Shown piece by piece: positions 2,069 through 60,739 of a stretch of 64,000 bases of DNA. The position numbers and the translations under genes were made by a program. Below the pieces are notes generated by a model, which did no database searches, was not told where the DNA came from, and saw only the letters and a program-made list of their open reading frames with translations. The stretch's first letter is position 1. Each line of letters opens with the position of its first letter. Where the stretch lies: IMG/VR virus record IMGVR_UViG_3300027749_002876, positions 186,001 to 250,000 of that record, one strand, 5' to 3'.

Positions 2069-2800
2069 TTAAACAGCTTCTGGTCGTTTTTCTAATTTAT
2101 AGCGTTTTCCAAGCATATCCCCGTAAATCAATGCTAGATAGCTTAACGTGCTTTCATCATCGTAATCAATAAAATGACTAGCATTACTAAAACGATATCT
2201 CCAACTATGCTGATTTGTGTGAACCGAGCCTTTAGCCCAATGTTTTAGTGCAGGACTAGGGTATAGTGACTTGTTTTTCTTAAACATATCGTTCAGGTCT
2301 ATTGCAAATGTCCCCTCAACTCTCCTAGATTTTAGATAAACTCTAAATTTATGATTAGGATTACGCACAAAATGCTTAATCCCAATAAAGTTAGATATAT
2401 GTGATTGAGTTACATCTATTTCAATGCCTGGCATATAATTTACAATATCTTTTAACTCTTGTAAATCATTACTGAATACCCCTACAGTATTATGTTCAAT
2501 TCTAATTGTAGAATTTTTCTTCTTTTTTAAGTCATTACGCCACTTAAGAAATGATGCTAATATTGCCAAATTCTCACGCACTTCATCCCGTTCATATGAG
2601 ATAGTATTATGACTGTAGCCTACTGCAGGTGCTTCTAATCTATCAACTAATTCCTGAATGTCATGTTTAATGTACCATGTATAACGAACACCTACTAGAT
2701 TAAATCTAGCTCGGTATTCGTATTTGTTATAGTAATGCTGGTCCCGATATTCATAAAAATCAACACCCGGTACGTCTTCAACTGATTTCAATAATCCCAT
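2069..2800 (-). CDS. hypothetical protein
   Basis: 243-aa ORF overlapping the clpA end; C-terminal FIDYDDESTLSYLALIYG loosely resembles the 56-57 kb paralog motif. Confidence 0.7.
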   Translation of the reverse strand: MGLLKSVEDVPGVDFYEYRDQHYYNKYEYRARFNLVGVRYTWYIKHDIQELVDRLEAPAVGYSHNTISYERDEVRENLAILASFLKWRNDLKKKKNSTIRIEHNTVGVFSNDLQELKDIVNYMPGIEIDVTQSHISNFIGIKHFVRNPNHKFRVYLKSRRVEGTFAIDLNDMFKKNKSLYPSPALKHWAKGSVHTNQHSWRYRFSNASHFIDYDDESTLSYLALIYGDMLGKRYKLEKRPEAV

Positions 2801-5051
2801 CTTCGCCTACTCTTGCTGTTGATTTTTGTACAACGTTGTACTCAATACTATCTTCATTCATAACCGCTGTGATAACACTATTCTTAATGCGTTCAAAAAG
2901 AATCTTCTTACTCAATGGTACACGAATCAATTCATCGATCTTACGTGCTAGTGGTCTTGCACCCATCTTCTTATCATAACCCTGTTCAGCTAGATATTCA
3001 ATAACAGGTTCTGATAAGTTTAATGTAATATCGTGCTTGTCCAATAGTGATTCTTTAAGCTGTTCAGTAAACTTAATAACAATTTTCTTAATTGAAAGCA
3101 TGTCAAGTTTGTTAAACTTACATACTAAATCTAAACGATTTCTAAACTCGGGTTTAAAGAATTCTTTCAATGCTTTGTCATCTTCGCCAGTCTTTTCTTG
3201 ACTACCGAAGCCAATGTTGTTTCGTTCACTGTCACTACTACCTAAATTACTTGTTAAGATAATAACACAGTTCTTACAGTTAACTTCTTTACCATTAGAC
3301 CCAGTGACACGACCTTCATCTAACATCTGTAAAAAGATGTTAAAAATATCAGGGTGTGCTTTCTCTACTTCATCAAACAACAAGATACTGTGTGGGTTCT
3401 TGCTCAAGTCATTAACTAATCGTCCGCCACCGACTTGACTATCACCAAAGCCAACATAACCAGGGGGAGGACCAATCAAACTTGATACAGAATGTTTCTC
3501 ACCGTATTCACTCATATCATATTTGAGTAATGTCATGTCGAGGTTTTTACTTAATAACTTAGCCAATTCTGTTTTACCTGTACCTGTTGGGCCTAAGAAT
3601 AAGAAACTTGCTGTAGGCTTAGTTTCACTACCGATGCCTGCAAAACTAACATAGATACGTTCTAATACTTTGTCAATTGTTTCATCCTGACCATACAGTT
3701 TACCCTTGACGTTAACTTCAAGTGTTTGAATAAGATTCATATTATCACCACTAAGTTTGTCAGCAGGTACACCTGTAAAGCGTTCAACCTGTTGAAAAAT
3801 CATATCTTTGGTGATTTGAATTCCCTTATTGCCATCAACACGTTGACGGGCACAAGCCGCATCAAGTAAATCAATACTTTTGTCAGGGTTTTTACGGTCA
3901 TGAATATATCGTAAAGCTGATTCAACTGAGGCAATAACTGCTTCACTTGTAATTTCAACGTCATGGAAGTCATTTAATCGTGTGCTTAATCCAGTAAGAA
4001 TACTAATTGTACTTTCTTTACTTGGCTCATCAATAGAGACACGATAGAATCTACGCATTAATGCACGATCCTTCTCAAACGATTCGTAATATTCTTCCCA
4101 AGTAGTACTGGCGATAACTTTCAATGTACCTTTAGTGATAGCTGGTTTAATTAAGTTAGCAAAGTCAACCGCACCACCATTTGCATTACCACTACCACTC
4201 ATTGTATGAGCCTCATCAATGAATAATATTGCTTTCTTTTTTGTGTTAAGTGCTTCTAATACACCTTTAACTTTTTCTTCAAAGTCACCGCGATATTTAC
4301 TTCCAGCAAGTAGTGAACCTACTTCAAGACTATATACTTCATGTCCAACAATAAATTCAGGACAATCACCTAGTGCAATTGAATTAGCAAGACCTTCAGC
4401 GATAGCAGTTTTACCTACACCCGGATCACCTACCATCAATACATTTGCTTTAAATCGTTTAGCAAGAACATTAATGATTTCATCTAATTCTTTTGTTCTT
4501 CCAATTAGAGGTTCTAATTTATTTTGACGGGCAAGTTCACTTAGATTAGTAGTATATTCTTCTAAGATTTCATCTGCTTGACCTTCACTTAATTTACTGG
4601 TAAATTCAGCACCCTTGTATGTTTTTTGCCAGTGATTTACAAACTCTTGTTTATTGACACCATATTTCAATAAGAAATAATGTGCATGACTATTACCTTC
4701 ACTTGCCATACTTAAGTACAAGTCAATTGTAGTAACTTGTCTACGACCGGTAAATAACACTTGTGTTACACTACGATTCATAACACGTTCTAAACTGTTT
4801 GTTTTACGTGGTTGAACTTGGTCAACTGTAACGTTACTTAGTTCAATTGCATGTAGTCCATCAAGATAGCTAGTTACTTCCTGAACCATTAAATTAACAT
4901 CAGCTCCAAAACTATCCAGACATTTATTAAATGGTGTATGGGTAATTAATGCTAACAATAAATGCTCAACTGTGCAATATTGATGTTTTCTTTCTTTTGC
5001 AAAAGAAATAGCCTGTTCAATAATGTTTTCGATTTCGGGTGAATTGGTCAA
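2778..5051 (-). CDS. clpA: ClpA-like Hsp100 AAA+ unfoldase
   Basis: Clp N-domain (EHLLLAL); Walker A motifs GDPGVGKT and GPTGTGKT; pore loops KYRG and GYVG; IGF loop (NNIGFG); GARPL; no ClpB middle coiled coil; TTG start after AAGGA. Confidence 0.92.
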   Translation of the reverse strand: MTNSPEIENIIEQAISFAKERKHQYCTVEHLLLALITHTPFNKCLDSFGADVNLMVQEVTSYLDGLHAIELSNVTVDQVQPRKTNSLERVMNRSVTQVLFTGRRQVTTIDLYLSMASEGNSHAHYFLLKYGVNKQEFVNHWQKTYKGAEFTSKLSEGQADEILEEYTTNLSELARQNKLEPLIGRTKELDEIINVLAKRFKANVLMVGDPGVGKTAIAEGLANSIALGDCPEFIVGHEVYSLEVGSLLAGSKYRGDFEEKVKGVLEALNTKKKAILFIDEAHTMSGSGNANGGAVDFANLIKPAITKGTLKVIASTTWEEYYESFEKDRALMRRFYRVSIDEPSKESTISILTGLSTRLNDFHDVEITSEAVIASVESALRYIHDRKNPDKSIDLLDAACARQRVDGNKGIQITKDMIFQQVERFTGVPADKLSGDNMNLIQTLEVNVKGKLYGQDETIDKVLERIYVSFAGIGSETKPTASFLFLGPTGTGKTELAKLLSKNLDMTLLKYDMSEYGEKHSVSSLIGPPPGYVGFGDSQVGGGRLVNDLSKNPHSILLFDEVEKAHPDIFNIFLQMLDEGRVTGSNGKEVNCKNCVIILTSNLGSSDSERNNIGFGSQEKTGEDDKALKEFFKPEFRNRLDLVCKFNKLDMLSIKKIVIKFTEQLKESLLDKHDITLNLSEPVIEYLAEQGYDKKMGARPLARKIDELIRVPLSKKILFERIKNSVITAVMNEDSIEYNVVQKSTARVGEDGIIEIS

Positions 5052-8685: not shown

Positions 8686-8944
8686 GTTTGGCAGTAATTC
8701 CTGCTTCTTTTTCTAACTGTTCAATAAGATTGGTATATATTTTCTTATAGTATTCATTCATCTTATCAAAATCAGTATCAACTATCTTACCTTCAATTAC
8801 GCACTTTTCTACTTTTTTCTTTGCGTAATCAATAATAACATTGCAGGTTTGTAAGTCTGCTTTTTTAATATTTTTACTTACAGCAACAGACTCATCAATC
8901 TGCCCGCCCGGTCTTCTCATAAATGTAATGAGTAAATATCTCAT
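8672..8944 (-). CDS. hypothetical protein
   Basis: 90 aa; ATGA overlap with the clamp-loader gene. Confidence 0.7.
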   Translation of the reverse strand: MRYLLITFMRRPGGQIDESVAVSKNIKKADLQTCNVIIDYAKKKVEKCVIEGKIVDTDFDKMNEYYKKIYTNLIEQLEKEAGITAKQNGA

Positions 8945-9864
8945 GCCGTCAATTCCGCCAGTGTTGCTGCCAGTGAAATTTCAGGAATCCCTACTAATGG
9001 CAGATTTGCTAAACCATTGCGAATTATAATGATACTTGCGTCTTTCTTCTCTGATGAGTTACCCCACAAGTCTAAGTTATCATACATCCATTTGTAAGTA
9101 TCTTCGACACGTGTAGGGTACATAGCAATGTATTGCATTAGTTGTTGTCTTGCTTCCATAATCTTACCTGCTTTAAACAACTGCGTTGCTTCTAACAATA
9201 GCTCATGTTCACTACTACCCTGTGCTTGTGGCTTCATCAACTTGTTACCACTACTATTAACCTGTAATTGATTTAAACATTTACGCAAATCTGGGTATGT
9301 TGCACGAACATAACTATCTAAATCATCTAAATCAAATTCAACATTCTCAGTAACCAATACTGTAGCGGCTCTTGCGGTGAACTCAGTTTGATCGGTCTTT
9401 GCAATGTGAAATTCATGGCATCGTGATTTTAATGCAGGGATAATTTTATGTTGATAGTTGCATGTGAGAATATATCTTACAGTATCAGCATATGCTTCCA
9501 TATCGTTACGCAATGCCGCTTGTGAAGCTTGTGTTAAGTAATCAGCTTCGTCTAGTAGAACAACCTTGAATTTACCAAACGGCATCGTTTGAACAAAACC
9601 ATTAATCTTATCACGCATATTATCAACACCGTTTTCTCTACTAGCATTGATTTCCAATACGTCATAATCTTCTACTCCAAGTTCGTGTATCAACACTTTT
9701 GCAAGAGTTGTCTTACCAGTACCCGGATCACCACTCAATAGTAAATGCGGTATAGTACCTTCACTTACCCAACCTTCAACTTGTTTCTTTTGTCGTTCAT
9801 TAACAAACACATAATCTTGTACTGTGTTCGGACGATACTTCTCAACCCAAAGTTTGTTCTTCAT
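8941..9864 (-). CDS. gp44: clamp loader AAA+ subunit (gp44/RFC-like)
   Basis: LWVEKYRP, GDPGTGKTT, INAS, DEAD, ALKSRC. Confidence 0.95.
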   Translation of the reverse strand: MKNKLWVEKYRPNTVQDYVFVNERQKKQVEGWVSEGTIPHLLLSGDPGTGKTTLAKVLIHELGVEDYDVLEINASRENGVDNMRDKINGFVQTMPFGKFKVVLLDEADYLTQASQAALRNDMEAYADTVRYILTCNYQHKIIPALKSRCHEFHIAKTDQTEFTARAATVLVTENVEFDLDDLDSYVRATYPDLRKCLNQLQVNSSGNKLMKPQAQGSSEHELLLEATQLFKAGKIMEARQQLMQYIAMYPTRVEDTYKWMYDNLDLWGNSSEKKDASIIIIRNGLANLPLVGIPEISLAATLAELTA

Positions 9865-10154
9865 TTTCTTAACATTTCTAGTGTGATAACGTGTGCGATG
9901 CCCTGACCCAAATCTTGCTCAGAGGGGATGATATGTAATGTGTTATCATGTCTATCAGTTTTTTCATTGTAACTTGAATATTCTAGCACATAACCACCAT
10001 TAGCCATATGTATTGTGAAATTCATACCTCTGCTATCAAGCTGTGACCCTCTAGTGATAGCAAGAGGACCTCTTCTATGAGGTTTTGATTCTACTACCTC
10101 ATTGTCTTGTGGGAATATAAAGTTGTGTAATTTTTGTCTAAACCAGTTTATCAT
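9861..10154 (-). CDS. hypothetical protein
   Basis: 97-aa ORF coupled to neighbours. Confidence 0.7.
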   Translation of the reverse strand: MINWFRQKLHNFIFPQDNEVVESKPHRRGPLAITRGSQLDSRGMNFTIHMANGGYVLEYSSYNEKTDRHDNTLHIIPSEQDLGQGIAHVITLEMLRK

Positions 10155-10520
10155 TTAAAATACCTTGTCGCCCATGGTCTCATCCGTCATTGGTTCGTCA
10201 CTGACCATAAGTATGTCGTTAGGATCAATCTTACGAATAACTCTTTCACCAGTGCCGTCATCTATTTTAATCCCTCTAGTCCAACGACCGTGACTAATTA
10301 GGATATACTGCCCAGCTTTCACGTCCAGTTGTGTTGGACCTACAGCATATACTTGTCCCCAACGTGGGCGAATACCAGCAGACTTCATATCATCATTAGG
10401 TAGTAAGATACCACCATTTGTAATACGTACATCAAACTTCATGTCACTAACAATGATAGTGTCACCTATCGCAGTTAATGATTTGATTTTGTGCGGTGCA
10501 AATGCTAATTTTGTTTCCAT
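10155..10520 (-). CDS. groES: co-chaperonin GroES-like protein
   Basis: DTIIV...TNGGILLP...GQVYAVGP...DILMV. Confidence 0.88.
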   Translation of the reverse strand: METKLAFAPHKIKSLTAIGDTIIVSDMKFDVRITNGGILLPNDDMKSAGIRPRWGQVYAVGPTQLDVKAGQYILISHGRWTRGIKIDDGTGERVIRKIDPNDILMVSDEPMTDETMGDKVF

Positions 10521-10521
10521 A

Positions 10522-10878
10522 TTATTTCTTTGATTCTTTGGCTTTAATTTTTTCTACTTCAATATCATCCTCAATTGATTCTTCTAACTCTAATTCTGCT
10601 ACAGTTAGTTCCTCAACTTTTGGTTGAACTGCTTCTACTTTATGCGGGATTGGTTTAGTTGTAACAGGTCTTTTAACCTGTGCTGATTTATTACCTACAG
10701 TTTTTCCATAAGCTTCATTTACTTTATCAGTAACCGGTCTAATTACTCGACCACTAGAATCAATTGTGTCGCCTCTAGCATTAACGCTCATATTACCAAC
10801 TGCCCTAGTATGCTCGTTTCTTGCAGCCAGTGCTCCCATATCTACTGATTTTCCCATTGCGGATTTATAATTTTTCAT
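10522..10878 (-). CDS. hypothetical protein
   Basis: 118 aa; AGGAG SD. Confidence 0.7.
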   Translation of the reverse strand: MKNYKSAMGKSVDMGALAARNEHTRAVGNMSVNARGDTIDSSGRVIRPVTDKVNEAYGKTVGNKSAQVKRPVTTKPIPHKVEAVQPKVEELTVAELELEESIEDDIEVEKIKAKESKK

Positions 10879-10888
10879 TTTGGTCTCC

Positions 10889-11395
10889 TTATTTTAAAAA
10901 CTCATCTATTGACAAATCATAGTACAAACTATTTATACGATGTATCTCAAGTAAAAACAATACAAAACTTGCTACACTACTACCTCGACCTACACCCCAA
11001 ACAATATTATGTTTACGCATAGTGTCAACCAAATACTTAAGATACTTTAATAGAATAAACATATCACGGTCTTGGAACTTAATTAACTCTTCACCTGCTC
11101 TTTGTAATTCTGCTTCAGTAGTACACTTGTCTAGTACATACTTAGCAATGTCCATATTTAAATATTCAGGTGGCAAGTGCCAAGATGATTGATTAGTGTT
11201 ATCAAATTCCTCTACTGATACTTTTGGGTCAACATACTCAATAAGTTTGGGTATATTTTCCAATTGCAATACATCATTAAAGTTAATAGCTTTCTCTACA
11301 AAAGCATATTTTATTGTACGTAACGGGTCTTGTAGATATAACAAACACAAGTCTGACTCAGTAAAAATAGATTGACCGTAAATATCTGATTTCAT
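10889..11395 (-). CDS. dnaE: DNA polymerase III alpha (DnaE)-like N-terminal palm fragment (start revised to MKSDIYG)
   Basis: QRAGEELIKF...YLVDTMRKHNIVWGVGRGSSVASFVLFLLEIHRINSL matches the DnaE GPGRGS region. Confidence 0.85.
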   Translation of the reverse strand: MKSDIYGQSIFTESDLCLLYLQDPLRTIKYAFVEKAINFNDVLQLENIPKLIEYVDPKVSVEEFDNTNQSSWHLPPEYLNMDIAKYVLDKCTTEAELQRAGEELIKFQDRDMFILLKYLKYLVDTMRKHNIVWGVGRGSSVASFVLFLLEIHRINSLYYDLSIDEFLK

Positions 11396-51277: not shown

Positions 51278-52720
51278 TTATTTCTTTAAACTATTAAGCA
51301 TTGCCTTCAATTTTGACCCCTGCACATCTGCTATAATACGCTTGTTTTCAGGCTCAAGTATCTCTCCTGTAGCTTGGTCTATGATAGGTTCAGTTGATAA
51401 TAACACAGATTGTGGCTTTAAGCTACTCATAATATCATTAGCACTGGGTTTGGGAGTATAACTATTCTCATTGTCAGGATCGCTATCGCTGATACGCATT
51501 GTCTCAATATCATAATCTAAGTCAATCTTTTGACCTACACCAGTTGAACTACGTGACTTCATACACTGAATTTGATACTTTCCACGCTCTCGCATACTGC
51601 GACTTGTAAAGATACCAAACACGTTATCTGCTGTATTAATCTTACTGATACCACCAGCAATATGACTATGGTCAAACTCAATCTCATCAACTGCACTACG
51701 ATTTAACTGACTTGCAGTAACCATCAATATGCCTAATTCTTTTGCTAAGTTACGCAATTCTTCTGCTACATACTTGTCTTTGATAAACTGGTCGTTAGGA
51801 TTAACTTTAACAGAAACTGGCATAACCAAATCTAAGTAGTCAACCATTACAAAGTCAATCTTAATACCTGTTTGAATTTGTACTTCTTTTAAATAAGCAC
51901 GAATGTCATTTACGTTACTTTGTGCAGGTAATCCTTTAACACGATACTGCCCAGACTTCTTTCCGACCATCTTAACTTTAAGACTAGTAGTATCAATGTC
52001 TTTACGAATTGCTTTAGTTCCCATCATAGTCAACATAGCATCTGTTCTTAATGATGTTAGTTCTTCACTCAGTTCTAGTGTTACATATACACCACTCATT
52101 CCCTGTTTCAACCAGTTCAAAGCAATATTCATCATAACCAAACTTTTACCTGAACCACTGCCACCTGCAAAGATGTTGAGTTCACCACGACTAAATCCAC
52201 CATATAAGATACGATCCATTTGTGGCCAGCCTGTACTTACTTGTCCACCATTGTTAAAGTATTTGTTGATACGTGCTGCCGGGTCATAGAAGTAATCAGT
52301 TCCCATGTCTTTTTGTAAACTAATTTGTACCGCATCTTTAATCAATTTCTCAACAGGATCAAAGTCACCCTTCTCAAGTAAGTCTGCCGCTTTAAGAATA
52401 GCACGTTCTAATTCTTGTCGTTTAGTAAATGATTCAAACTCATCCAAGAACCAATCAAATTGATTAGGACTGAAGTTGGGTATAATATCAATGTCTTGCC
52501 CTGTAATAGCTTTGATTTGTGCAGGATCGGGCAAAATACTATATTTTGTTGAATGCTCTTTGTACAAATTTGCAACCGGGCGCAATGACCTATCAAAATT
52601 ATCACTGTTCAATATGTTCATAACTCTGGTATAGAGTTCTGCTTCAGTAATCATTATACGCAAAAATATCTTTTGCACTTCTATACCATACTCTTTTTTA
52701 TTTTCGTAATCTTTTTTCAA
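51278..52720 (-). CDS. gp41: replicative DnaB-family helicase (gp41-like); start uncertain
   Basis: GGSGSGKS, TLEL, VDYLD, TASQLNR, KSRSS. Confidence 0.92.
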   Translation of the reverse strand: MKKDYENKKEYGIEVQKIFLRIMITEAELYTRVMNILNSDNFDRSLRPVANLYKEHSTKYSILPDPAQIKAITGQDIDIIPNFSPNQFDWFLDEFESFTKRQELERAILKAADLLEKGDFDPVEKLIKDAVQISLQKDMGTDYFYDPAARINKYFNNGGQVSTGWPQMDRILYGGFSRGELNIFAGGSGSGKSLVMMNIALNWLKQGMSGVYVTLELSEELTSLRTDAMLTMMGTKAIRKDIDTTSLKVKMVGKKSGQYRVKGLPAQSNVNDIRAYLKEVQIQTGIKIDFVMVDYLDLVMPVSVKVNPNDQFIKDKYVAEELRNLAKELGILMVTASQLNRSAVDEIEFDHSHIAGGISKINTADNVFGIFTSRSMRERGKYQIQCMKSRSSTGVGQKIDLDYDIETMRISDSDPDNENSYTPKPSANDIMSSLKPQSVLLSTEPIIDQATGEILEPENKRIIADVQGSKLKAMLNSLKK

Positions 52721-53675
52721 TTTTTTTCCTTTGTAGTTCTATTTTGATTTTGCTTGCCGTTGCACTACTCAATATACTGAGCAATGTAGGCAACTTACCA
52801 TACTTAACTACCGCGTCATTCACATCTTTAACATCATCTTCCCAATTGGGAATACTAATACTATAACCTAATTCTAATGCTCTATCACATGTTTCTAAAC
52901 CAGTTTCATCTCTATCGGGAATAAAAATAATTTGTTTATTTAATTGTGCTAGTAATTGTACTTGAGTATCATTGATTGTATTATGTGTTAACGCACAAGC
53001 ATTTAAACTTAATGCATCAAAAATACCTTCAACTAACAAACATACTTCCCAATTAGGTTTCTGAAAGTCATAACCAAATACATAGCCAGGTTGTTGCTCG
53101 TTAATATATTTTGGGATTTTGTTATCTAAGAATCTACTTGTATGACCTACAATTTTGTTCTTGTAAGTATAGGGGATAATAATTCTGTTTGACTGTCTGC
53201 CAGTGTCATTAGGTGTAACTAAGAACGGGTAGTCATTATAATTTATCAGTCTTGCAGACAAGTAATCAACGTATACTTTGTGTAATGGATTACTTACATC
53301 TAATATTTCAGCTTCAGGGAGTTTATGTTCTTCAAATTTTATTTTTGTTTTTTGTTTCTTAAGATGAGCAAAATCTAACAGATCCCTATATTGCAGACTT
53401 TCTAAACTCCATCGTTGAATTTGAATATCATCTATACCACACCATTTTAATAAACTTTTAGTAATCTCACTAATTTGTTTACCTAAGGTGAACCCACATT
53501 TAAACCCACAATTGAAACAGGCATATGACCAGTTTTCTCCGTCTTTTTTAACACCACCTCTACCTCTAGTGTCAGATTTGTGCCCACGATGATGACAGCA
53601 TATAGCATTAAAGCTATGCCATCCACCTTGTGTTATTTTTTTCTTTCCGGGAATTACTGACAGTATATCAAACAT
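52698..53675 (-). CDS. gp61: DNA primase (gp61-like)
   Basis: N-terminal zinc ribbon (CC...CFNC), RIIIP, TOPRIM EGIFD, DRDETG, KDVND. Confidence 0.88.
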   Translation of the reverse strand: MFDILSVIPGKKKITQGGWHSFNAICCHHRGHKSDTRGRGGVKKDGENWSYACFNCGFKCGFTLGKQISEITKSLLKWCGIDDIQIQRWSLESLQYRDLLDFAHLKKQKTKIKFEEHKLPEAEILDVSNPLHKVYVDYLSARLINYNDYPFLVTPNDTGRQSNRIIIPYTYKNKIVGHTSRFLDNKIPKYINEQQPGYVFGYDFQKPNWEVCLLVEGIFDALSLNACALTHNTINDTQVQLLAQLNKQIIFIPDRDETGLETCDRALELGYSISIPNWEDDVKDVNDAVVKYGKLPTLLSILSSATASKIKIELQRKKIEKRLRK

Positions 53676-54558: not shown

Positions 54559-54939
54559 ATGATTCAAAACGAATTTTTTAACAAACTATCTCAAAATCAC
54601 CCGTTCATAACCATATGTTCATACGCCAACCAAGATTATGTTGGAATAGTACAAAATAGAGATGATATAGTCACCACTATATATGACTATGGAGCTATTA
54701 TTGATAATATAGCTAGAGAAAAATTCTTAGAATTAGGTGATATTTGGTGGTGGGAAAGTAATAGACTTATCCCTATTAACCTGTTCTTAAAAGACGAATG
54801 GACTATCTTTAAACCATATCTTAGAACATTCAATAACAAAAGCTTAACAGTCATACACGGCCCAACGTGTAGTATGTCTGAACTAAACAAACGTAGAAGT
54901 AAACGCCGTAGTATTACCCTTGTTAAACGGATTTTGTAA
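54559..54939 (+). CDS. hypothetical late protein
   Basis: 126 aa; GATAAATA at 54530-54537. Confidence 0.75.
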   Translation: MIQNEFFNKLSQNHPFITICSYANQDYVGIVQNRDDIVTTIYDYGAIIDNIAREKFLELGDIWWWESNRLIPINLFLKDEWTIFKPYLRTFNNKSLTVIHGPTCSMSELNKRRSKRRSITLVKRIL

Positions 54940-55495
54940 GTAAGTTCATATGTACTACTACTAGTTGGCTATAGGATAAGCTGTGACTTTTTTTGAAACT
55001 ATACCCATCGTCTCCTTTGTCCCAGATAGTCATACTGACTTCTTTCCAACTCTTACCAATTAAATGTCTTTTAGCTGGGCGAATCAATGCTAAAAACATT
55101 GCTAATCTAGGAATACTATCAATAGGTTCAGGCATTTTTTTAATAGATTGATAATGATTTCCTAAATGAATTAGTTTCTCAACAAATTCTCTGTCATTTA
55201 ACTTAGACCAATCAGGGTCTGCCATCAATTCAACTAAATGTTTTTCATTTTGTACTTGTGAGTATACATGAACATTCAATAAATCTAATTTAAAATATCC
55301 ACGACTTTCTGCCACAACATAATCAATTGCTGCCATATCATTTACAGGATCATAAGGAATATCAGTAACATATACACCAGTAGCATGTTTACGCATAGGT
55401 TTAGCATTACGCATAGCGGCAGGCGTGTGTTTAATAAGTTGTAATAACTTGTCTCTATCACCAAAATCAATGTCAATGTCTGATTCTATTCTCAT
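54923..55495 (-). CDS. dnaE: DnaE-like minimal catalytic fragment
   Basis: DIDIDF, HATGVYV, YFKLDLL, LALIRP, GYSFKKSH..Y in canonical order within 190 aa. Confidence 0.85.
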   Translation of the reverse strand: MRIESDIDIDFGDRDKLLQLIKHTPAAMRNAKPMRKHATGVYVTDIPYDPVNDMAAIDYVVAESRGYFKLDLLNVHVYSQVQNEKHLVELMADPDWSKLNDREFVEKLIHLGNHYQSIKKMPEPIDSIPRLAMFLALIRPAKRHLIGKSWKEVSMTIWDKGDDGYSFKKSHSLSYSQLVVVHMNLLTKSV

Positions 55496-56046
55496 CTTGG
55501 AGGTGCTACCAATTCTGCTTTCATTAATTTAGTATACGCTTTTTGTACAACAATAGCTTGTCTTTCGGCATCTTCTACTGCTTTGTGACTAGTCACGTGA
55601 CCACCGTCTTTAAGACTTACGCCGGTTATCTCGTACAAGGTACGTGTATCTCTAACGGTGTAGAAAGGCCAAGGGATTCGCATTTCAAGGTTTCGCCAGG
55701 CCGACTCTGCCACAACCACATCGAATGATGCACCGTTACTCCAAACAGCACGGCGATTCCAACAAAACTTATAAAGTATTTCCATACATTCTCTAAACGG
55801 AATTCTGCCGTGTTCTCCCATAGCCTCTTCAAGTGCTGCCGGGCTTTGCTCACTCCACCATCGTAATGTATCTTCATTTATACTCCTATTATAAATTTCT
55901 GTTTGTTCTTCAATCGTTGGTCGTAACTCTAATCTTTCAACAACACCACTACCTTTAGGATCAAATCTTACTGCGCCAATGGTTAGTATAACACAATCAG
56001 GACTTGTGTCAAGTGTTTCCATATCAATCATTATATCTTGTGCCAT
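55492..56046 (-). CDS. DEDDh 3'-5' exonuclease
   Basis: IDMETL, WSNGASFD, RDTRT, HKAVEDA. Confidence 0.88.
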   Translation of the reverse strand: MAQDIMIDMETLDTSPDCVILTIGAVRFDPKGSGVVERLELRPTIEEQTEIYNRSINEDTLRWWSEQSPAALEEAMGEHGRIPFRECMEILYKFCWNRRAVWSNGASFDVVVAESAWRNLEMRIPWPFYTVRDTRTLYEITGVSLKDGGHVTSHKAVEDAERQAIVVQKAYTKLMKAELVAPPR

Positions 56047-59273: not shown

Positions 59274-59302
59274 ATTATAACACTTTCTTATCTGTATGTC
59301 AA
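59274..59302 (-). promoter_or_regulatory. consensus sigma70 promoter TTGACA-N17-TATAAT, 6 nt before ATG
   Basis: exact consensus; no SD. Confidence 0.85.
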
Positions 59303-60739
59303 CTTTTCTAAGTCAAACGGGTAGTTTGCTTCTTTATAAAAAGCCTTACGTTGGGTTAAATGTCTTTTGGCAAACTTACAACTGCTTGTTACATCCCAAA
59401 TTTGTACAAAGTCTTTATCTTCTGCTTTACGAATGCCTCGACCGATGCTTTGGATAACACGGACGAAGGATTTTCCAGGTTCAATGAGAACCAGATTAAA
59501 AATCCTAGGTATGTTGATACCAACAGCGGCGACACCATAAGTCGCAACAATAATTTTATTTGTACTGGTTGCAATTTCATCATATTCTTCTTTCCTTTCA
59601 ACCATATTAGTAGCACCACTCACAAATACACTATCGGGTAATCTACTAACAATTTCTTTACCTGCATTAACTCTATCAACTAGAATCAATACATTGCCTG
59701 TTTCTTTAATCTTTAATATTAGTTGTGCAATAGCATCTAGTCTATTTGTATCCTCAAGCAAGTGTTTCAACTCACTTTGGTAATTACTAAACTCTACATC
59801 ATCTTTTAATTGAACAATATTAACGTGACATTGTGCTAGTACACCTTGATCCTGTAACTCACTTGCACTTAGTTTACTGATAACAGGACCTAAACTAACA
59901 AACAATGATTGTGCTTCAAACTTAGCTTTAGGGATAGTTCCGGTCAATCCCCAGCGAATCGGAACCTTAGCAAAGGCCCCAGTCAGTAATGTCTTTAGTG
60001 CATCTGCTTTGGCCATGTGAACCTCATCTACCATGACACAAACAACACCTTCAATGAAGTCCATAATATCTGCTTCACCTGCTTTTGTTTTCTTAAGCAT
60101 ATTGTTAAGACTCTGCCAAGTACAAATAGTATGTGTTTTATTGTACTCTTTGCGATCACCAAAGTATACACCAACATCTAATCCAAGATTAATGTAATCT
60201 GCTTCTGTTTGTGTTACTAAACTCTTGTTCGGAACGATAACAATACTACGACCATATTGTTCTATACTATAACTTAGTGCGGCAGTCATCAATGTTTTAC
60301 CCGCACCTGTAGCAATCTCTTGTAGTGATTGCGGGTTCTTTAGAAAGTTATTAACAATAGTAATTTGATAATCACGTAGCTCTACGGGGGTGCCTTCTTT
60401 GGGATGACCTTTAGGCCAGTTCTTATGAGCGAACGTTGATTCGGACACTTCAGCGAATTCAAAGGTTGTTGTATAATCCCTAGTATCATCCAACTCAATA
60501 TCATATCCTGCTCTGTCTAATACGGGAAGTATTTCTTCCAATAGATTAATATATGTACTACCAGCAAGACTGAAATAACTTACTTTGCCATTCCATCTTC
60601 CTAGTCGTACTGCAGGTAGATATCGTGCACCGGGAACTTCATACTCAAACATTTTCATTAGTGCTTTACGCTCTGCTAATTCAAGACCTTCTATCTTTAC
60701 ATTAACTTCATCTTTAACGATTATTTTACATTGTTTCAT
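59288..60739 (-). CDS. uvsW: SF2 DNA helicase UvsW
   Basis: LRDYQ, ATGAGKT, DEVH, GLTGT, QSIGRGIR. Confidence 0.92.
   Translation of the reverse strand: MKQCKIIVKDEVNVKIEGLELAERKALMKMFEYEVPGARYLPAVRLGRWNGKVSYFSLAGSTYINLLEEILPVLDRAGYDIELDDTRDYTTTFEFAEVSESTFAHKNWPKGHPKEGTPVELRDYQITIVNNFLKNPQSLQEIATGAGKTLMTAALSYSIEQYGRSIVIVPNKSLVTQTEADYINLGLDVGVYFGDRKEYNKTHTICTWQSLNNMLKKTKAGEADIMDFIEGVVCVMVDEVHMAKADALKTLLTGAFAKVPIRWGLTGTIPKAKFEAQSLFVSLGPVISKLSASELQDQGVLAQCHVNIVQLKDDVEFSNYQSELKHLLEDTNRLDAIAQLILKIKETGNVLILVDRVNAGKEIVSRLPDSVFVSGATNMVERKEEYDEIATSTNKIIVATYGVAAVGINIPRIFNLVLIEPGKSFVRVIQSIGRGIRKAEDKDFVQIWDVTSSCKFAKRHLTQRKAFYKEANYPFDLEKLTYR

What the first reader, a model, noticed from the sequence alone, without database searches (positions are those of the whole stretch)
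10889..11395. DnaE split through the palm, with the halves about 43 kb apart
Seen: this 168-aa ORF ends ...GVGRGSS...YDLSIDEFLK, equivalent to DnaE ...LLFERFLN. The ORF at 54923-55495 begins MRIESDIDIDF, equivalent to the immediately following SMPD.D.DF. The two are collinear and complementary, and neither carries intein residues, unlike cyanobacterial split DnaE. No PHP domain is present. Inference: a non-covalent heterodimeric family-C polymerase of only about 360 aa. I recall similar fragments in Rak2-like jumbo phages but know of no established function.
Basis: partly seen in the sequence, partly recalled or inferred. Interest (0 to 1): 0.7.

Follow-up and report, generated by a model that had tools for sequence, protein, structure and literature searches.

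The report
Two-piece mini DNA polymerase III
This uncultivated freshwater jumbo phage carries, as two genes 43.5 kb apart, the two halves of a stripped-down bacterial-type (family C) DNA polymerase core; the halves almost certainly reassemble into one enzyme, but the arrangement was already described for this phage group in 2021 and its job is still untested.

Summary
ORF 10889-11395 (minus strand, 168 aa) ends at the equivalent of E. coli Pol III alpha N393. ORF 54923-55495 (minus strand, 190 aa) starts at the equivalent of R396. So the cut lies in the loop between the GS-motif helix and the DxD strand of the palm. There is no intein and no PHP domain.

The halves are under strong purifying selection (dN/dS about 0.05-0.14). 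They co-occur in about 95 cultured jumbo phages and in near-complete relatives. They are predicted to bind (ipSAE 0.88, best control 0.47). They also occur naturally fused in a 375-aa protein whose model matches only family C polymerases (Z 15-22).

Residues that contact the dNTP, the primer end and the templating base are conserved, including the base-stacking Tyr and the steric-gate His. The thumb, the index finger and everything after the middle finger are missing. All 9 relatives tested also encode a T4-type family B polymerase.

The best reading is a non-covalent, two-chain, dNTP-specific auxiliary DNA polymerase.

It is not new. Iyer et al. 2021 (PMC7824862) described exactly this "minimal, split Pol III alpha" in group 2.2 jumbo phages. 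New here are the residue map, the fused forms and the conserved 40-46 kb spacing.

The parts
10889..11395 (-). N-half of the minimal family C polymerase (168 aa). Residues 1-72 form a phage-specific alpha/beta module. [quoted passage not shown]
   Evidence: Pfam PF07733 positions 20-94, E 2e-8. PHROG 11127, E 4e-39. Profile versus PDB: residues 95-167 equal E. coli alpha 320-392. AF2 model pLDDT 85.8, with residues 73-168 matching E. coli 279-393 at Z 9.3. R137, G138 and S139 are invariant in 43 of 43 sequences. dN/dS is 0.05-0.08.
54923..55495 (-). C-half (190 aa). It carries the catalytic strand D6-x-D8-x-D10, the K69/D71 strand, the middle-finger R139-P140 and the helix-loop-helix Y165-x-F167-K-K169-S-H171. 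The thumb and index finger are deleted.
   Evidence: PHROG 11778, E 7e-56. Profile versus 2HNH, E 1.5e-5, in three collinear pieces. Invariant D6, D8, K69, D71 and P140 in 77 of 77 sequences. dN/dS is 0.08-0.14.
55492..56046 (-). DEDD 3'-5' exonuclease (Rv2179c-like, T4 DexA-like), translationally coupled to the C-half by an ATGA overlap. It is a facultative neighbour, not a defining part.
   Evidence: Pfam PF16473, E 2.5e-31. ATGA overlap read directly. It lies within 3 kb upstream of the C-half in 51 of 83 related loci that have enough upstream DNA, directly adjacent in some and up to 1.25 kb away in others. It is absent there in PA5oct and Atu_ph07. The family occurs in 508 phage records of many kinds.
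54559..54939 (+). Context: a conserved 126-aa gene on the opposite strand whose end overlaps the 3' end of the C-half gene.
   Evidence: PHROG 11637, E 9e-31. Present in 83 of 87 C-half loci. The same architecture is seen in PA5oct, Atu_ph07 and the fused-gene contigs.
51278..53675 (-). Context: DNA primase (52698-53675) and DnaB-like helicase (51278-52720), downstream of the C-half.
   Evidence: PHROG 47 and PHROG 19. A primase sits in the same position in PA5oct and Atu_ph07.
8941..10878 (-). Context: the conserved block downstream of the N-half. It holds a 118-aa protein (10522-10878, SD GGAG about 5 nt after the N-half stop, start 11 nt after it), a GroES/gp31-like co-chaperonin (10155-10520), a 97-aa ORF, and a clamp-loader gp44-like protein (8941-9864).
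   Evidence: PHROG 14844, 931/3188 and 168. The junction was read. The block is conserved in 155-160 of 162 N-half loci and in 7 cultured phages.

Best explanation
The two ORFs encode the two chains of one enzyme, a minimal family C (Pol III alpha-type) DNA polymerase core.

The N-half supplies the first palm strand and the GS motif, which grips the sugar and the beta/gamma phosphates of the incoming dNTP. The C-half supplies the strand with the two metal-binding aspartates, the strand with the third aspartate and the primer-phosphate lysine, the Arg-Pro that contacts the templating base, and the Tyr/His loop that stacks on the incoming base and excludes ribonucleotides. After translation the chains associate non-covalently by completing one beta-sheet (N-half strand 132-135 against C-half strand 9-11), and the N-half's extra N-terminal module packs onto the C-half.

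The enzyme lacks the thumb, index finger, clamp-binding, OB and PHP parts, and the phage group carries a T4-type family B replicase. The enzyme is therefore most likely a distributive, open-pocket, dNTP-specific auxiliary polymerase (gap filling, repair or a lagging-strand task) that depends on other replisome proteins to hold DNA.

Shown: homology, collinearity, conservation, co-occurrence, the existence of fused forms, and a predicted interface. Inferred: heterodimer formation in vivo, template-directed DNA synthesis, and the auxiliary role.
For: - **Collinear, complementary homology to DnaE.** N-half 95-167 equals E. coli 320-392. C-half equals 399-418, 539-641 and 739-769.
- **Fold.** The model of the natural fusion P0279 (pLDDT 82.5) matches only family C polymerases. 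Residues 69-375 equal E. coli 266-773 at Z 15 and Taq at Z 21.7. The next folds score Z below 4.
- **Active-site and pocket residues are conserved.** This was mapped against the E. coli ternary-complex contacts listed in preprint 10.64898/2026.06.29.735100. R362/G363/S364 are 43 of 43. D401/D403 are 77 of 77. D405 is 76 of 77. K553/D555 are 77 of 77. R639/P640 are 76 and 77 of 77. Y754 is Y or F in 61 of 77. F756 is F or Y in 73 of 77. H760 is 75 of 77.
- **Purifying selection on both halves.** dN/dS is 0.05-0.14.
- **Predicted binding.** ipSAE 0.88, best of 3 controls 0.47. The mark was reached by 58 of 80 solved complexes and 2 of 110 mismatched pairs. The runs agree in at least 97% of contacts, and partner pLDDT is at least 88.
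- **Rosetta-stone fusions.** Three clusters of 375-376 aa occur on 4 contigs from 4 samples, continuous with bacterial DnaE through the junction.
- **Co-occurrence.** 95 and 96 phage records carry the N-half and the C-half. Both halves are present in 4 of 5 large IMG/VR relatives. The fifth contig ends about 3.7 kb short of the expected site.
- **Family B polymerase.** Present in 9 of 9 relatives tested.
- **No other DnaE parts.** No PHP, finger or HhH family was detected in three near-complete relatives.
Against: - No biochemical or genetic data exist in the literature I could search.
- The thumb and the index finger are missing. [quoted passage not shown]
- R390 contacts the dNTP in E. coli, and R390A costs 27-fold in catalytic efficiency. 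Here it is an invariant Glu.
- No clamp-binding or DNA-binding domain is detectable, so it is unclear how primer-template is held.
- The complex score may partly reflect the model's memory of the intact Pol III alpha fold, and my own alignments were used.
- Expression of the two genes could not be shown.
- The window's own record is only about 22% complete. The family B polymerase was seen in a 524-kb record whose two halves are 100% identical to the window's, not in the window's record itself.
Confidence: 0.6

Rival explanations
1. The reassembled enzyme is a nucleotidyltransferase of another kind. It could be template-independent tailing, primer synthesis, or synthesis of a signalling nucleotide. 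In this reading the Pol-beta-like core has been re-used after the DNA-gripping domains were lost.
For: The thumb, the index finger and all C-terminal DNA- and clamp-binding domains are absent. R390 is replaced by an invariant Glu. Weak structural similarity to minimal Pol-beta-fold transferases such as MenT, ANT and Cid1 appears at Z 3-4.
Against: The residues that touch the templating base (R639, P640) are conserved. So are the Tyr that stacks on the incoming base and the His that excludes ribose 2'-OH. These would be dispensable for untemplated or ribonucleotide chemistry. Similarity to family C polymerases (Z 15-22) dwarfs that to other transferases. Both genes sit in replication gene clusters.
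Confidence: 0.2
2. The halves do not work together. Each has its own role, or one or both are decaying remnants of a captured dnaE gene.
For: They lie 43.5 kb apart, in different gene blocks, with the C-half gene first. No operon links them.
Against: Each half lacks what the other has: the GS motif on one, the catalytic aspartates on the other. dN/dS is 0.05-0.14 for both. More than 7,900 homologous clusters of constant length were found for each half. Co-occurrence is near-perfect. Fused forms exist. The predicted interface passes its controls.
Confidence: 0.04
3. The halves are joined covalently, by split inteins as in cyanobacterial DnaE or at the RNA level.
For: Split-intein DnaE genes are the best-known split family C polymerases.
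Against: The N-half stops two DnaE residues before the C-half begins, so there is no room for about 100 plus 35 intein residues. No intein family hit was found. The split point is the same in all split N-halves aligned. They all end at the same EF[LI]x position; a few, such as Atu_ph07, end one residue earlier in the profile. The genes are 30-224 kb apart, with the C-half upstream wherever the spacing is short.
Confidence: 0.01

Closest known systems
Minimal split DNA polymerase III alpha of group 2.2 jumbo phages (Iyer, Anantharaman, Krishnan, Burroughs, Aravind 2021, Viruses 13:63, PMC7824862)
   Same: This is the same thing. The paper describes two stand-alone proteins from distantly located genes, an N-terminal NTP-binding part and a C-terminal Mg2+- and template-binding part. 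No other Pol III domains are present, and a family B polymerase accompanies them. PHROGs 11127 and 11778 already label both halves 'DNA polymerase'.
   Different: This copy comes from an uncultivated freshwater phage (an IMG/VR contig). The points added here were not found in my keyword search of the paper's text, which I did not read in full: single-chain fused relatives, the residue-level map onto the 2026 E. coli ternary complex, the R390-to-Glu change, and the conserved 40-46 kb spacing.
Bacterial DnaE / PolC (family C replicative polymerases; PDB 2HNH, 2HPI, 3E0D, 3F2B)
   Same: They share the Pol-beta-like palm, the GS motif, three catalytic Asp, K553, R639-P640 and the Y754/H760 helix-loop-helix. 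Structural Z is 15-22 over about 295 residues.
   Different: The phage enzyme is 358 aa in two chains, against 1,160 aa in one. It has no PHP domain, thumb, index, ring or little finger, beta-clamp-binding HhH domain, OB fold or tau-binding tail. R390 is Glu. The N-half has a 72-residue N-terminal module with no DnaE counterpart.
Cyanobacterial split-intein DnaE
   Same: It is a family C polymerase encoded by two distant genes.
   Different: There the halves carry split-intein fragments and are ligated into one full-length chain. From memory, the break lies much further downstream, after the fingers. Here there are no intein residues, the break is inside the palm, and the product must stay non-covalent.
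Genes-in-pieces polymerases: split gp43 of some T4-related phages and the two-gene family B polymerase of Methanothermobacter (recalled from the literature, not tested here)
   Same: A polymerase catalytic domain is divided into two polypeptides that reassemble without ligation.
   Different: Those belong to family B. In the phage cases the pieces are adjacent, separated by a mobile endonuclease gene. Here the pieces are 30-224 kb apart, and this separation is conserved across a whole phage group.

Membership tests
Family C DNA polymerase (Pol III alpha / DnaE / PolC) | Pol-beta-like nucleotidyltransferase palm with the GS motif | tested here: met
   PF07733 hit above the cut-off. R137-G138-S139 equal R362-G363-S364 and are invariant in 43 of 43 sequences.
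Family C DNA polymerase (Pol III alpha / DnaE / PolC) | Three catalytic aspartates (E. coli D401, D403, D555) | tested here: met
   C-half D6, D8 and D71 are invariant in 77 of 77 sequences.
Family C DNA polymerase (Pol III alpha / DnaE / PolC) | Overall fold of the palm plus middle finger | tested here: met
   The fused-form model matches only family C polymerases, at Z 15-22 with about 295 residues aligned. The N-half model scores Z 9-10.6.
Family C DNA polymerase (Pol III alpha / DnaE / PolC) | N-terminal PHP domain | tested here: not met
   No PF02811 hit in either half or anywhere in three near-complete relatives. N-half residues 1-72 match nothing in Pol III alpha.
Family C DNA polymerase (Pol III alpha / DnaE / PolC) | Thumb, index/ring/little fingers, clamp-binding HhH domain, OB fold | tested here: not met
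   The profile alignment skips E. coli 419-538 and 642-738 and ends at about 770. The structural alignment ends at 773. No PF17657 or PF14579 was found in relatives' genomes.
Family C DNA polymerase (Pol III alpha / DnaE / PolC) | Template-directed dNTP polymerisation | not testable with these tools
   Only indirect evidence: the template-contact, base-stacking and steric-gate residues are conserved.
Minimal split Pol III alpha of group 2.2 jumbo phages (Iyer et al. 2021) | Two stand-alone proteins from distantly located genes, an NTP-binding N-part and a metal- and template-binding C-part | tested here: met
   The ORFs lie 43.5 kb apart. The domain content is as described.
Minimal split Pol III alpha of group 2.2 jumbo phages (Iyer et al. 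2021) | Carried by a T4-like (gp23-type) jumbo phage that also has a family B polymerase | tested here: met
   The window's record is a 91-kb fragment, about 22% complete, without PolB. A 524-kb record carries both halves at 100% identity plus PolB. T4-type clamp loader, primase, helicase and tail sheath genes are in the window.
Split-intein DnaE | Intein N- and C-fragments at the break | tested here: not met
   No intein family hit. The junction leaves only two DnaE residues unaccounted for.

The most novel reading that the evidence does not exclude
The fission is functional rather than accidental. The C-half is expressed with the primase/helicase cluster, and the N-half with the clamp-loader/co-chaperonin block on the far side of the tail module. 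An active, open-pocket family C polymerase would then exist only when both transcription units are on, which acts as a temporal AND gate. The arrangement is also evolutionarily reversible, because one low-GC phage lineage from metagenomes appears to have re-fused the halves. If the two-chain 358-aa enzyme really performs templated DNA synthesis without a thumb and index finger, it would be the smallest known polymerase of a replicative family.
Probability: 0.12. Interest if true: 0.7.

Novelty: new member of a known kind. Interest (0 to 1): 0.4.

Why it matters
Family C polymerases are the bacterial replicases and have been treated as large, single-chain, multi-domain machines. A conserved and abundant 358-aa two-chain version (more than 7,900 sequence clusters per half in metagenomes) defines the minimal catalytic core. 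It offers a natural split-enzyme system, and it has been proposed as a model of the ancestral form (Iyer et al. 2021).

The residue map made here gives concrete expectations: dNTP specificity through the retained steric-gate His, templating through R-P and Tyr, and probably low processivity and fidelity because the index finger and thumb are missing. It also identifies a natural fused form that should be easier to express and crystallise.

For the genome scan itself the result is mostly confirmatory. The finding is real and the interpretation right, but it is already in the literature.

Tried and rejected
- **Single-sequence searches.** Searches of the two halves against PDB sequences found nothing relevant. 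Profiles were needed.
- **Nucleotide search.** Megablast against cultured phages found nothing, so the phage has no close cultured relative.
- **Exonuclease as a dedicated proofreader.** I rejected this as a general feature. The neighbouring DEDD exonuclease lies within 3 kb upstream in only 51 of 83 related loci. It is absent at that site in PA5oct and Atu_ph07, and it belongs to a DexA-like family found in 508 unrelated phage records.
- **Further DnaE pieces elsewhere in the genome.** Searches for PHP, finger and HhH families found none in three near-complete relatives.
- **Apparent absence of the C-half in one 349-kb relative (G003).** This is an artefact. Synteny shows that the contig ends about 3.7 kb before the expected position.
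- **Expression.** No RNA run was listed for the C-half region. Two runs listed for the N-half contain only short fragments of relatives that are 85-95% alike, so transcription is not shown. The PA5oct RNA-seq paper gives no per-gene values in its text and no supplement is held.
- **Mixed alignment for the fused protein.** MAFFT repeatedly mis-placed the N-halves onto the C-part (A5, A6, A7, A9). Only A8, with few C-halves, was usable.
- Those rows were left out and not sent elsewhere.
- **Rooting the C-half tree.** Bacterial DnaE fragments (P0404, P0405) were considered as an outgroup. I dropped the idea because they are ordinary truncated DnaE proteins that overlap only the first part of the C-half.

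Full report
**1. The observation**

Both ORFs are real and lie on the minus strand: 10889-11395 (168 aa) and 54923-55495 (190 aa). The first hits Pfam DNA_pol3_alpha (PF07733) at profile positions 20-94 of 260, with E 2e-8, above the curated cut-off. The second has no Pfam hit. Both belong to PHROG families labelled DNA polymerase (11127 at E 4e-39 and 11778 at E 7e-56).

Homologues of the N-half are almost all 168-170 aa, which fixes the start at ATG 11395 rather than the upstream in-frame TTG. The window is part of a 91-kb IMG/VR virus record estimated at about 22% complete, so it is a fragment of a jumbo phage. The metagenome labels of related runs point to fresh water.

**2. Homology and the exact split point**

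A profile of 43 N-halves aligns residues 95-167 to E. coli Pol III alpha 320-392 without a gap, and to Taq alpha 380-454. A profile of 77 diverse C-halves hits E. coli alpha (2HNH) at E 1.5e-5 in three collinear pieces:
- profile 4-21 equals 399-418 (the DxD strand);
- profile 55-140 equals 539-641;
- profile 151-180 equals 739-769.

With these offsets N-half K168 corresponds to N393 and C-half M1 to R396. The cut therefore falls in the loop between the helix that follows the GS motif and the strand that carries the two metal-binding aspartates. That places it inside the Pol-beta-like nucleotidyltransferase core of the palm.

The N-halves of PA5oct, Atu_ph07 and the window all end at Pfam profile position 94, and every split N-half I aligned ends at the same EF[LI]x position. 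No intein or PHP family is detected, and there is no room for intein fragments.

**3. What is kept and what is lost**

The natural fused form (see section 5) was modelled with AlphaFold2 (pLDDT 82.5, pTM 0.79). Its 19 best Foldseek matches in the PDB are all family C polymerases: Taq, E. coli and M. tuberculosis alpha, and PolC, with E down to 2.4e-8. The next folds have E above 0.7.

VIA-align puts model residues 69-375 on E. coli alpha 266-773 (Z 15, 298 residues aligned) and on Taq 282-830 (Z 21.7). Other Pol-beta-fold transferases reach only Z 3-4. The model of the window's own N-half (pLDDT 85.8) matches E. coli 279-393 with residues 73-168 (Z 9.3). Residues 1-72 match nothing in Pol III alpha.

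So the enzyme keeps the palm and the middle finger. It lacks the PHP domain, the thumb (about 433-510), the index finger (about 642-738) and everything after about residue 773. No PHP, finger or HhH family is found elsewhere in three near-complete relatives, so there is no sign of further pieces.

**4. Residue map**

A 2026 preprint on E. coli Pol III ternary complexes (10.64898/2026.06.29.735100) lists the residues within 4 Å of the incoming dGTP and of the templating base.

| E. coli residue | Phage residue | Conservation |
|---|---|---|
| R362, G363, S364 | N-half R137, G138, S139 | 43 of 43 each |
| D401, D403 | C-half D6, D8 | 77 of 77 each |
| D405 | C-half D10 | 76 of 77 |
| K553, D555 | C-half K69, D71 | 77 of 77 each |
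| R639, P640 (templating base) | C-half R139, P140 | 76 and 77 of 77 |
| Y754 (stacks on the incoming base) | C-half Y165 | Y or F in 61 of 77 |
| F756 | C-half F167 | F or Y in 73 of 77 |
| K758 | C-half K169 | K or R in 75 of 77 |
| H760 (steric gate against ribonucleotides) | C-half H171 | 75 of 77 |

Two things differ. R390 contacts the dNTP in E. coli, and R390A costs 27-fold in efficiency according to that preprint. Here it is an invariant Glu (43 of 43). The index-finger residues R709, K714 and K715, which form the front wall of the pocket, are absent together with the finger.

Keeping the template-contact, base-stacking and sugar-gate residues argues for templated, dNTP-specific synthesis rather than another transferase chemistry. 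The missing wall and thumb suggest an open and poorly processive enzyme. This step is inference.

**5. Do the halves work together?**

- **Complementarity.** Each half lacks the essential motifs of the other.
- **Selection.** Against orthologues of 74-88% identity, Nei-Gojobori dN/dS is 0.05-0.08 for the closest N-half pairs (up to 0.14 for more distant ones) and 0.08-0.15 for the C-half. dS is near 1 or above, so the values are approximate.
- **Abundance.** Lengths are near-constant.
- **Co-occurrence.** tblastn finds the N-half in 95 and the C-half in 96 cultured-phage records of the same groups: Rak2-like, PA5oct-like, Atu_ph07, Phosso, SCTP-2, Xoo-sp13, RsoM2USA and a Vibrio phage. Four of five large IMG/VR relatives have both. 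In the fifth, synteny shows that the contig ends about 3.7 kb short of the expected C-half site.
- **Predicted complex.** The score is 0.88 against 0.47 for the best of 3 controls. The mark was reached by 58 of 80 solved complexes and 2 of 110 mismatched pairs. These counts hold only roughly, because my own alignments were used. The three runs agree in at least 97% of contacts, and partner pLDDT is at least 88. The tightest contacts pair N-half 132-135 with C-half 9-11, completing the palm sheet. N-half residues 1-31 and 61-74 pack on C-half 43-51 and 65-68. Because intact Pol III alpha structures are known, the pass may partly reflect memory of that fold.
- **Natural fusions.** P0279 (375 aa), P0391 and P0392 (376 aa, 78-81% identical to P0279) carry both parts in one chain, joined by about ten residues. 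They lie on four contigs from four samples. BLASTP aligns the fusion continuously with a bacterial DnaE through the junction.

**6. Fused forms: ancestral or secondary?**

In a maximum-likelihood tree of 92 C-parts, the fused clade (SH-aLRT 100) sits inside a 12-member clade (SH-aLRT 96). The other nine members of that clade are C-half-only proteins. For three of them I read the contigs, and no N-half lies within the available flanks, which reach up to 10 kb upstream but only 0.9-8.5 kb downstream.

This favours a secondary re-fusion in one low-GC lineage (25-27% GC). The tree is unrooted, however, and a root on the fused stem cannot be excluded. I leave the question open.

**7. Genomic setting**

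On the coding strand the order is:
- helicase (59288-60739);
- DexA-like exonuclease;
- C-half;
- an opposite-strand 126-aa gene;
- a 260-aa protein;
- primase and DnaB-like helicase (51278-53675);
- a block of roughly 30 kb with tail fibre, sheath and tube genes;
- N-half;
- a 118-aa protein, a GroES/gp31-like co-chaperonin and a clamp loader (8941-9864).

Each half thus sits at the edge of a replication cluster, and the tail module lies between them. The N-half block (N-half, a small protein, co-chaperonin, clamp loader) is conserved from this phage to PA5oct, Atu_ph07, Phosso, SCTP-2, PHA46, XbC2 and a Vibrio phage. The C-half block (C-half, opposite-strand gene, structural protein, primase) is conserved in PA5oct and Atu_ph07.

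Spacing between the halves:
- 40-46 kb in the freshwater clade, including 43.5 kb in a 524-kb record whose two halves are 100% identical to the window's;
- 43.7 kb in PA5oct-like phages;
- 30-34 kb in Rak2-like phages;
- 116-224 kb in the largest phages.

Wherever the spacing is short, the C-half gene is upstream on the same strand. The exonuclease overlaps the C-half start by ATGA, but it is only a facultative neighbour.

**8. Relation to the main replicase**

The window's own record holds no family B polymerase. All five large IMG/VR relatives hold a gp43-like ORF of about 915 aa, including the 524-kb record with the identical halves. All five cultured phages tested also hold one. The mini enzyme is therefore an addition to a T4-type replisome, not a replacement for it.

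**9. Prior knowledge**

Iyer et al. [quoted passage not shown] Attai et al. 2018 had annotated the N-half of Atu_ph07 as a Pol III alpha subunit. I found no experimental work on it in the library searched.

**10. Verdict**

This analysis adds:
- the precise junction;
- the residue-level argument for templated dNTP chemistry with an open pocket;
- the invariant R390-to-Glu change;
- the natural fused relatives and their nested position in the tree;
- the selection figures;
- the conserved spacing and gene order.

Heterodimer formation and activity remain predictions.

Noticed in passing
window 55492-56046 (-): A DexA-like DEDD 3'-5' exonuclease (PF16473) overlaps the C-half start by ATGA, which suggests translational coupling. 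It lies within 3 kb upstream of the C-half in 51 of 83 related loci but not in PA5oct or Atu_ph07. Whether it proofreads for the mini polymerase in this lineage is open.
   Followed up: partly
P0279, P0391, P0392; loci L097, L263, L264, L265: Single-chain (fused) versions of the mini polymerase, 375-376 aa, occur on four low-GC (25-27%) metagenome contigs from four samples. They are nested among split forms in the C-part tree. An overlapping opposite-strand gene follows them, as at the C-half locus.
   Followed up: partly
N-half residue 165 (window about 10898-10900): The position of E. coli R390, a dNTP-contacting residue, is an invariant Glu in all 43 N-halves aligned. This is a charge reversal of unknown consequence.
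   Followed up: no
G001 (IMG/VR record of 524,565 bp that contains sequence identical to the window's two halves): The record has two family B polymerase ORFs, of 1117 aa near 20 kb and 917 aa near 509 kb. It is larger than its relatives (335-352 kb). It may be a chimeric or concatenated assembly, or it may hold a real duplication.
   Followed up: no
PA5oct MK797984.1 217.6-221.4 kb; Atu_ph07 NC_042013.1 212.3-213.7 kb: The family B polymerase of these phages appears in two ORFs: 825 + 379 aa about 2.5 kb apart in PA5oct, and 578 + 418 aa adjacent in Atu_ph07. The main replicase may be in pieces as well.
   Followed up: no
window 54559-54939 (+): A conserved 126-aa gene of unknown function (PHROG 11637) lies on the opposite strand. 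Its end overlaps the last 17 nt of the C-half gene. It is present in 83 of 87 related loci and at the same place in PA5oct and Atu_ph07.
   Followed up: partly
window 10522-10878 (-): A 118-aa Lys/Glu-rich protein (PHROG 14844, unknown function) starts 11 nt after the N-half stop, behind a GGAG. A small gene at this position is conserved in all relatives examined. It could be an accessory factor of the polymerase or of the co-chaperonin that follows.
   Followed up: no
window 2778-5051 (-): A 757-aa AAA+ ATP-dependent protease (PHROG 4871, E 5e-229) is present. PA5oct-like phages are reported to carry a host-like FtsH.
   Followed up: no
P0323 (233 aa, metagenome): This protein has the first roughly 107 residues of a C-half followed by unrelated sequence. 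It may be a chimeric or frameshifted gene call.
   Followed up: no
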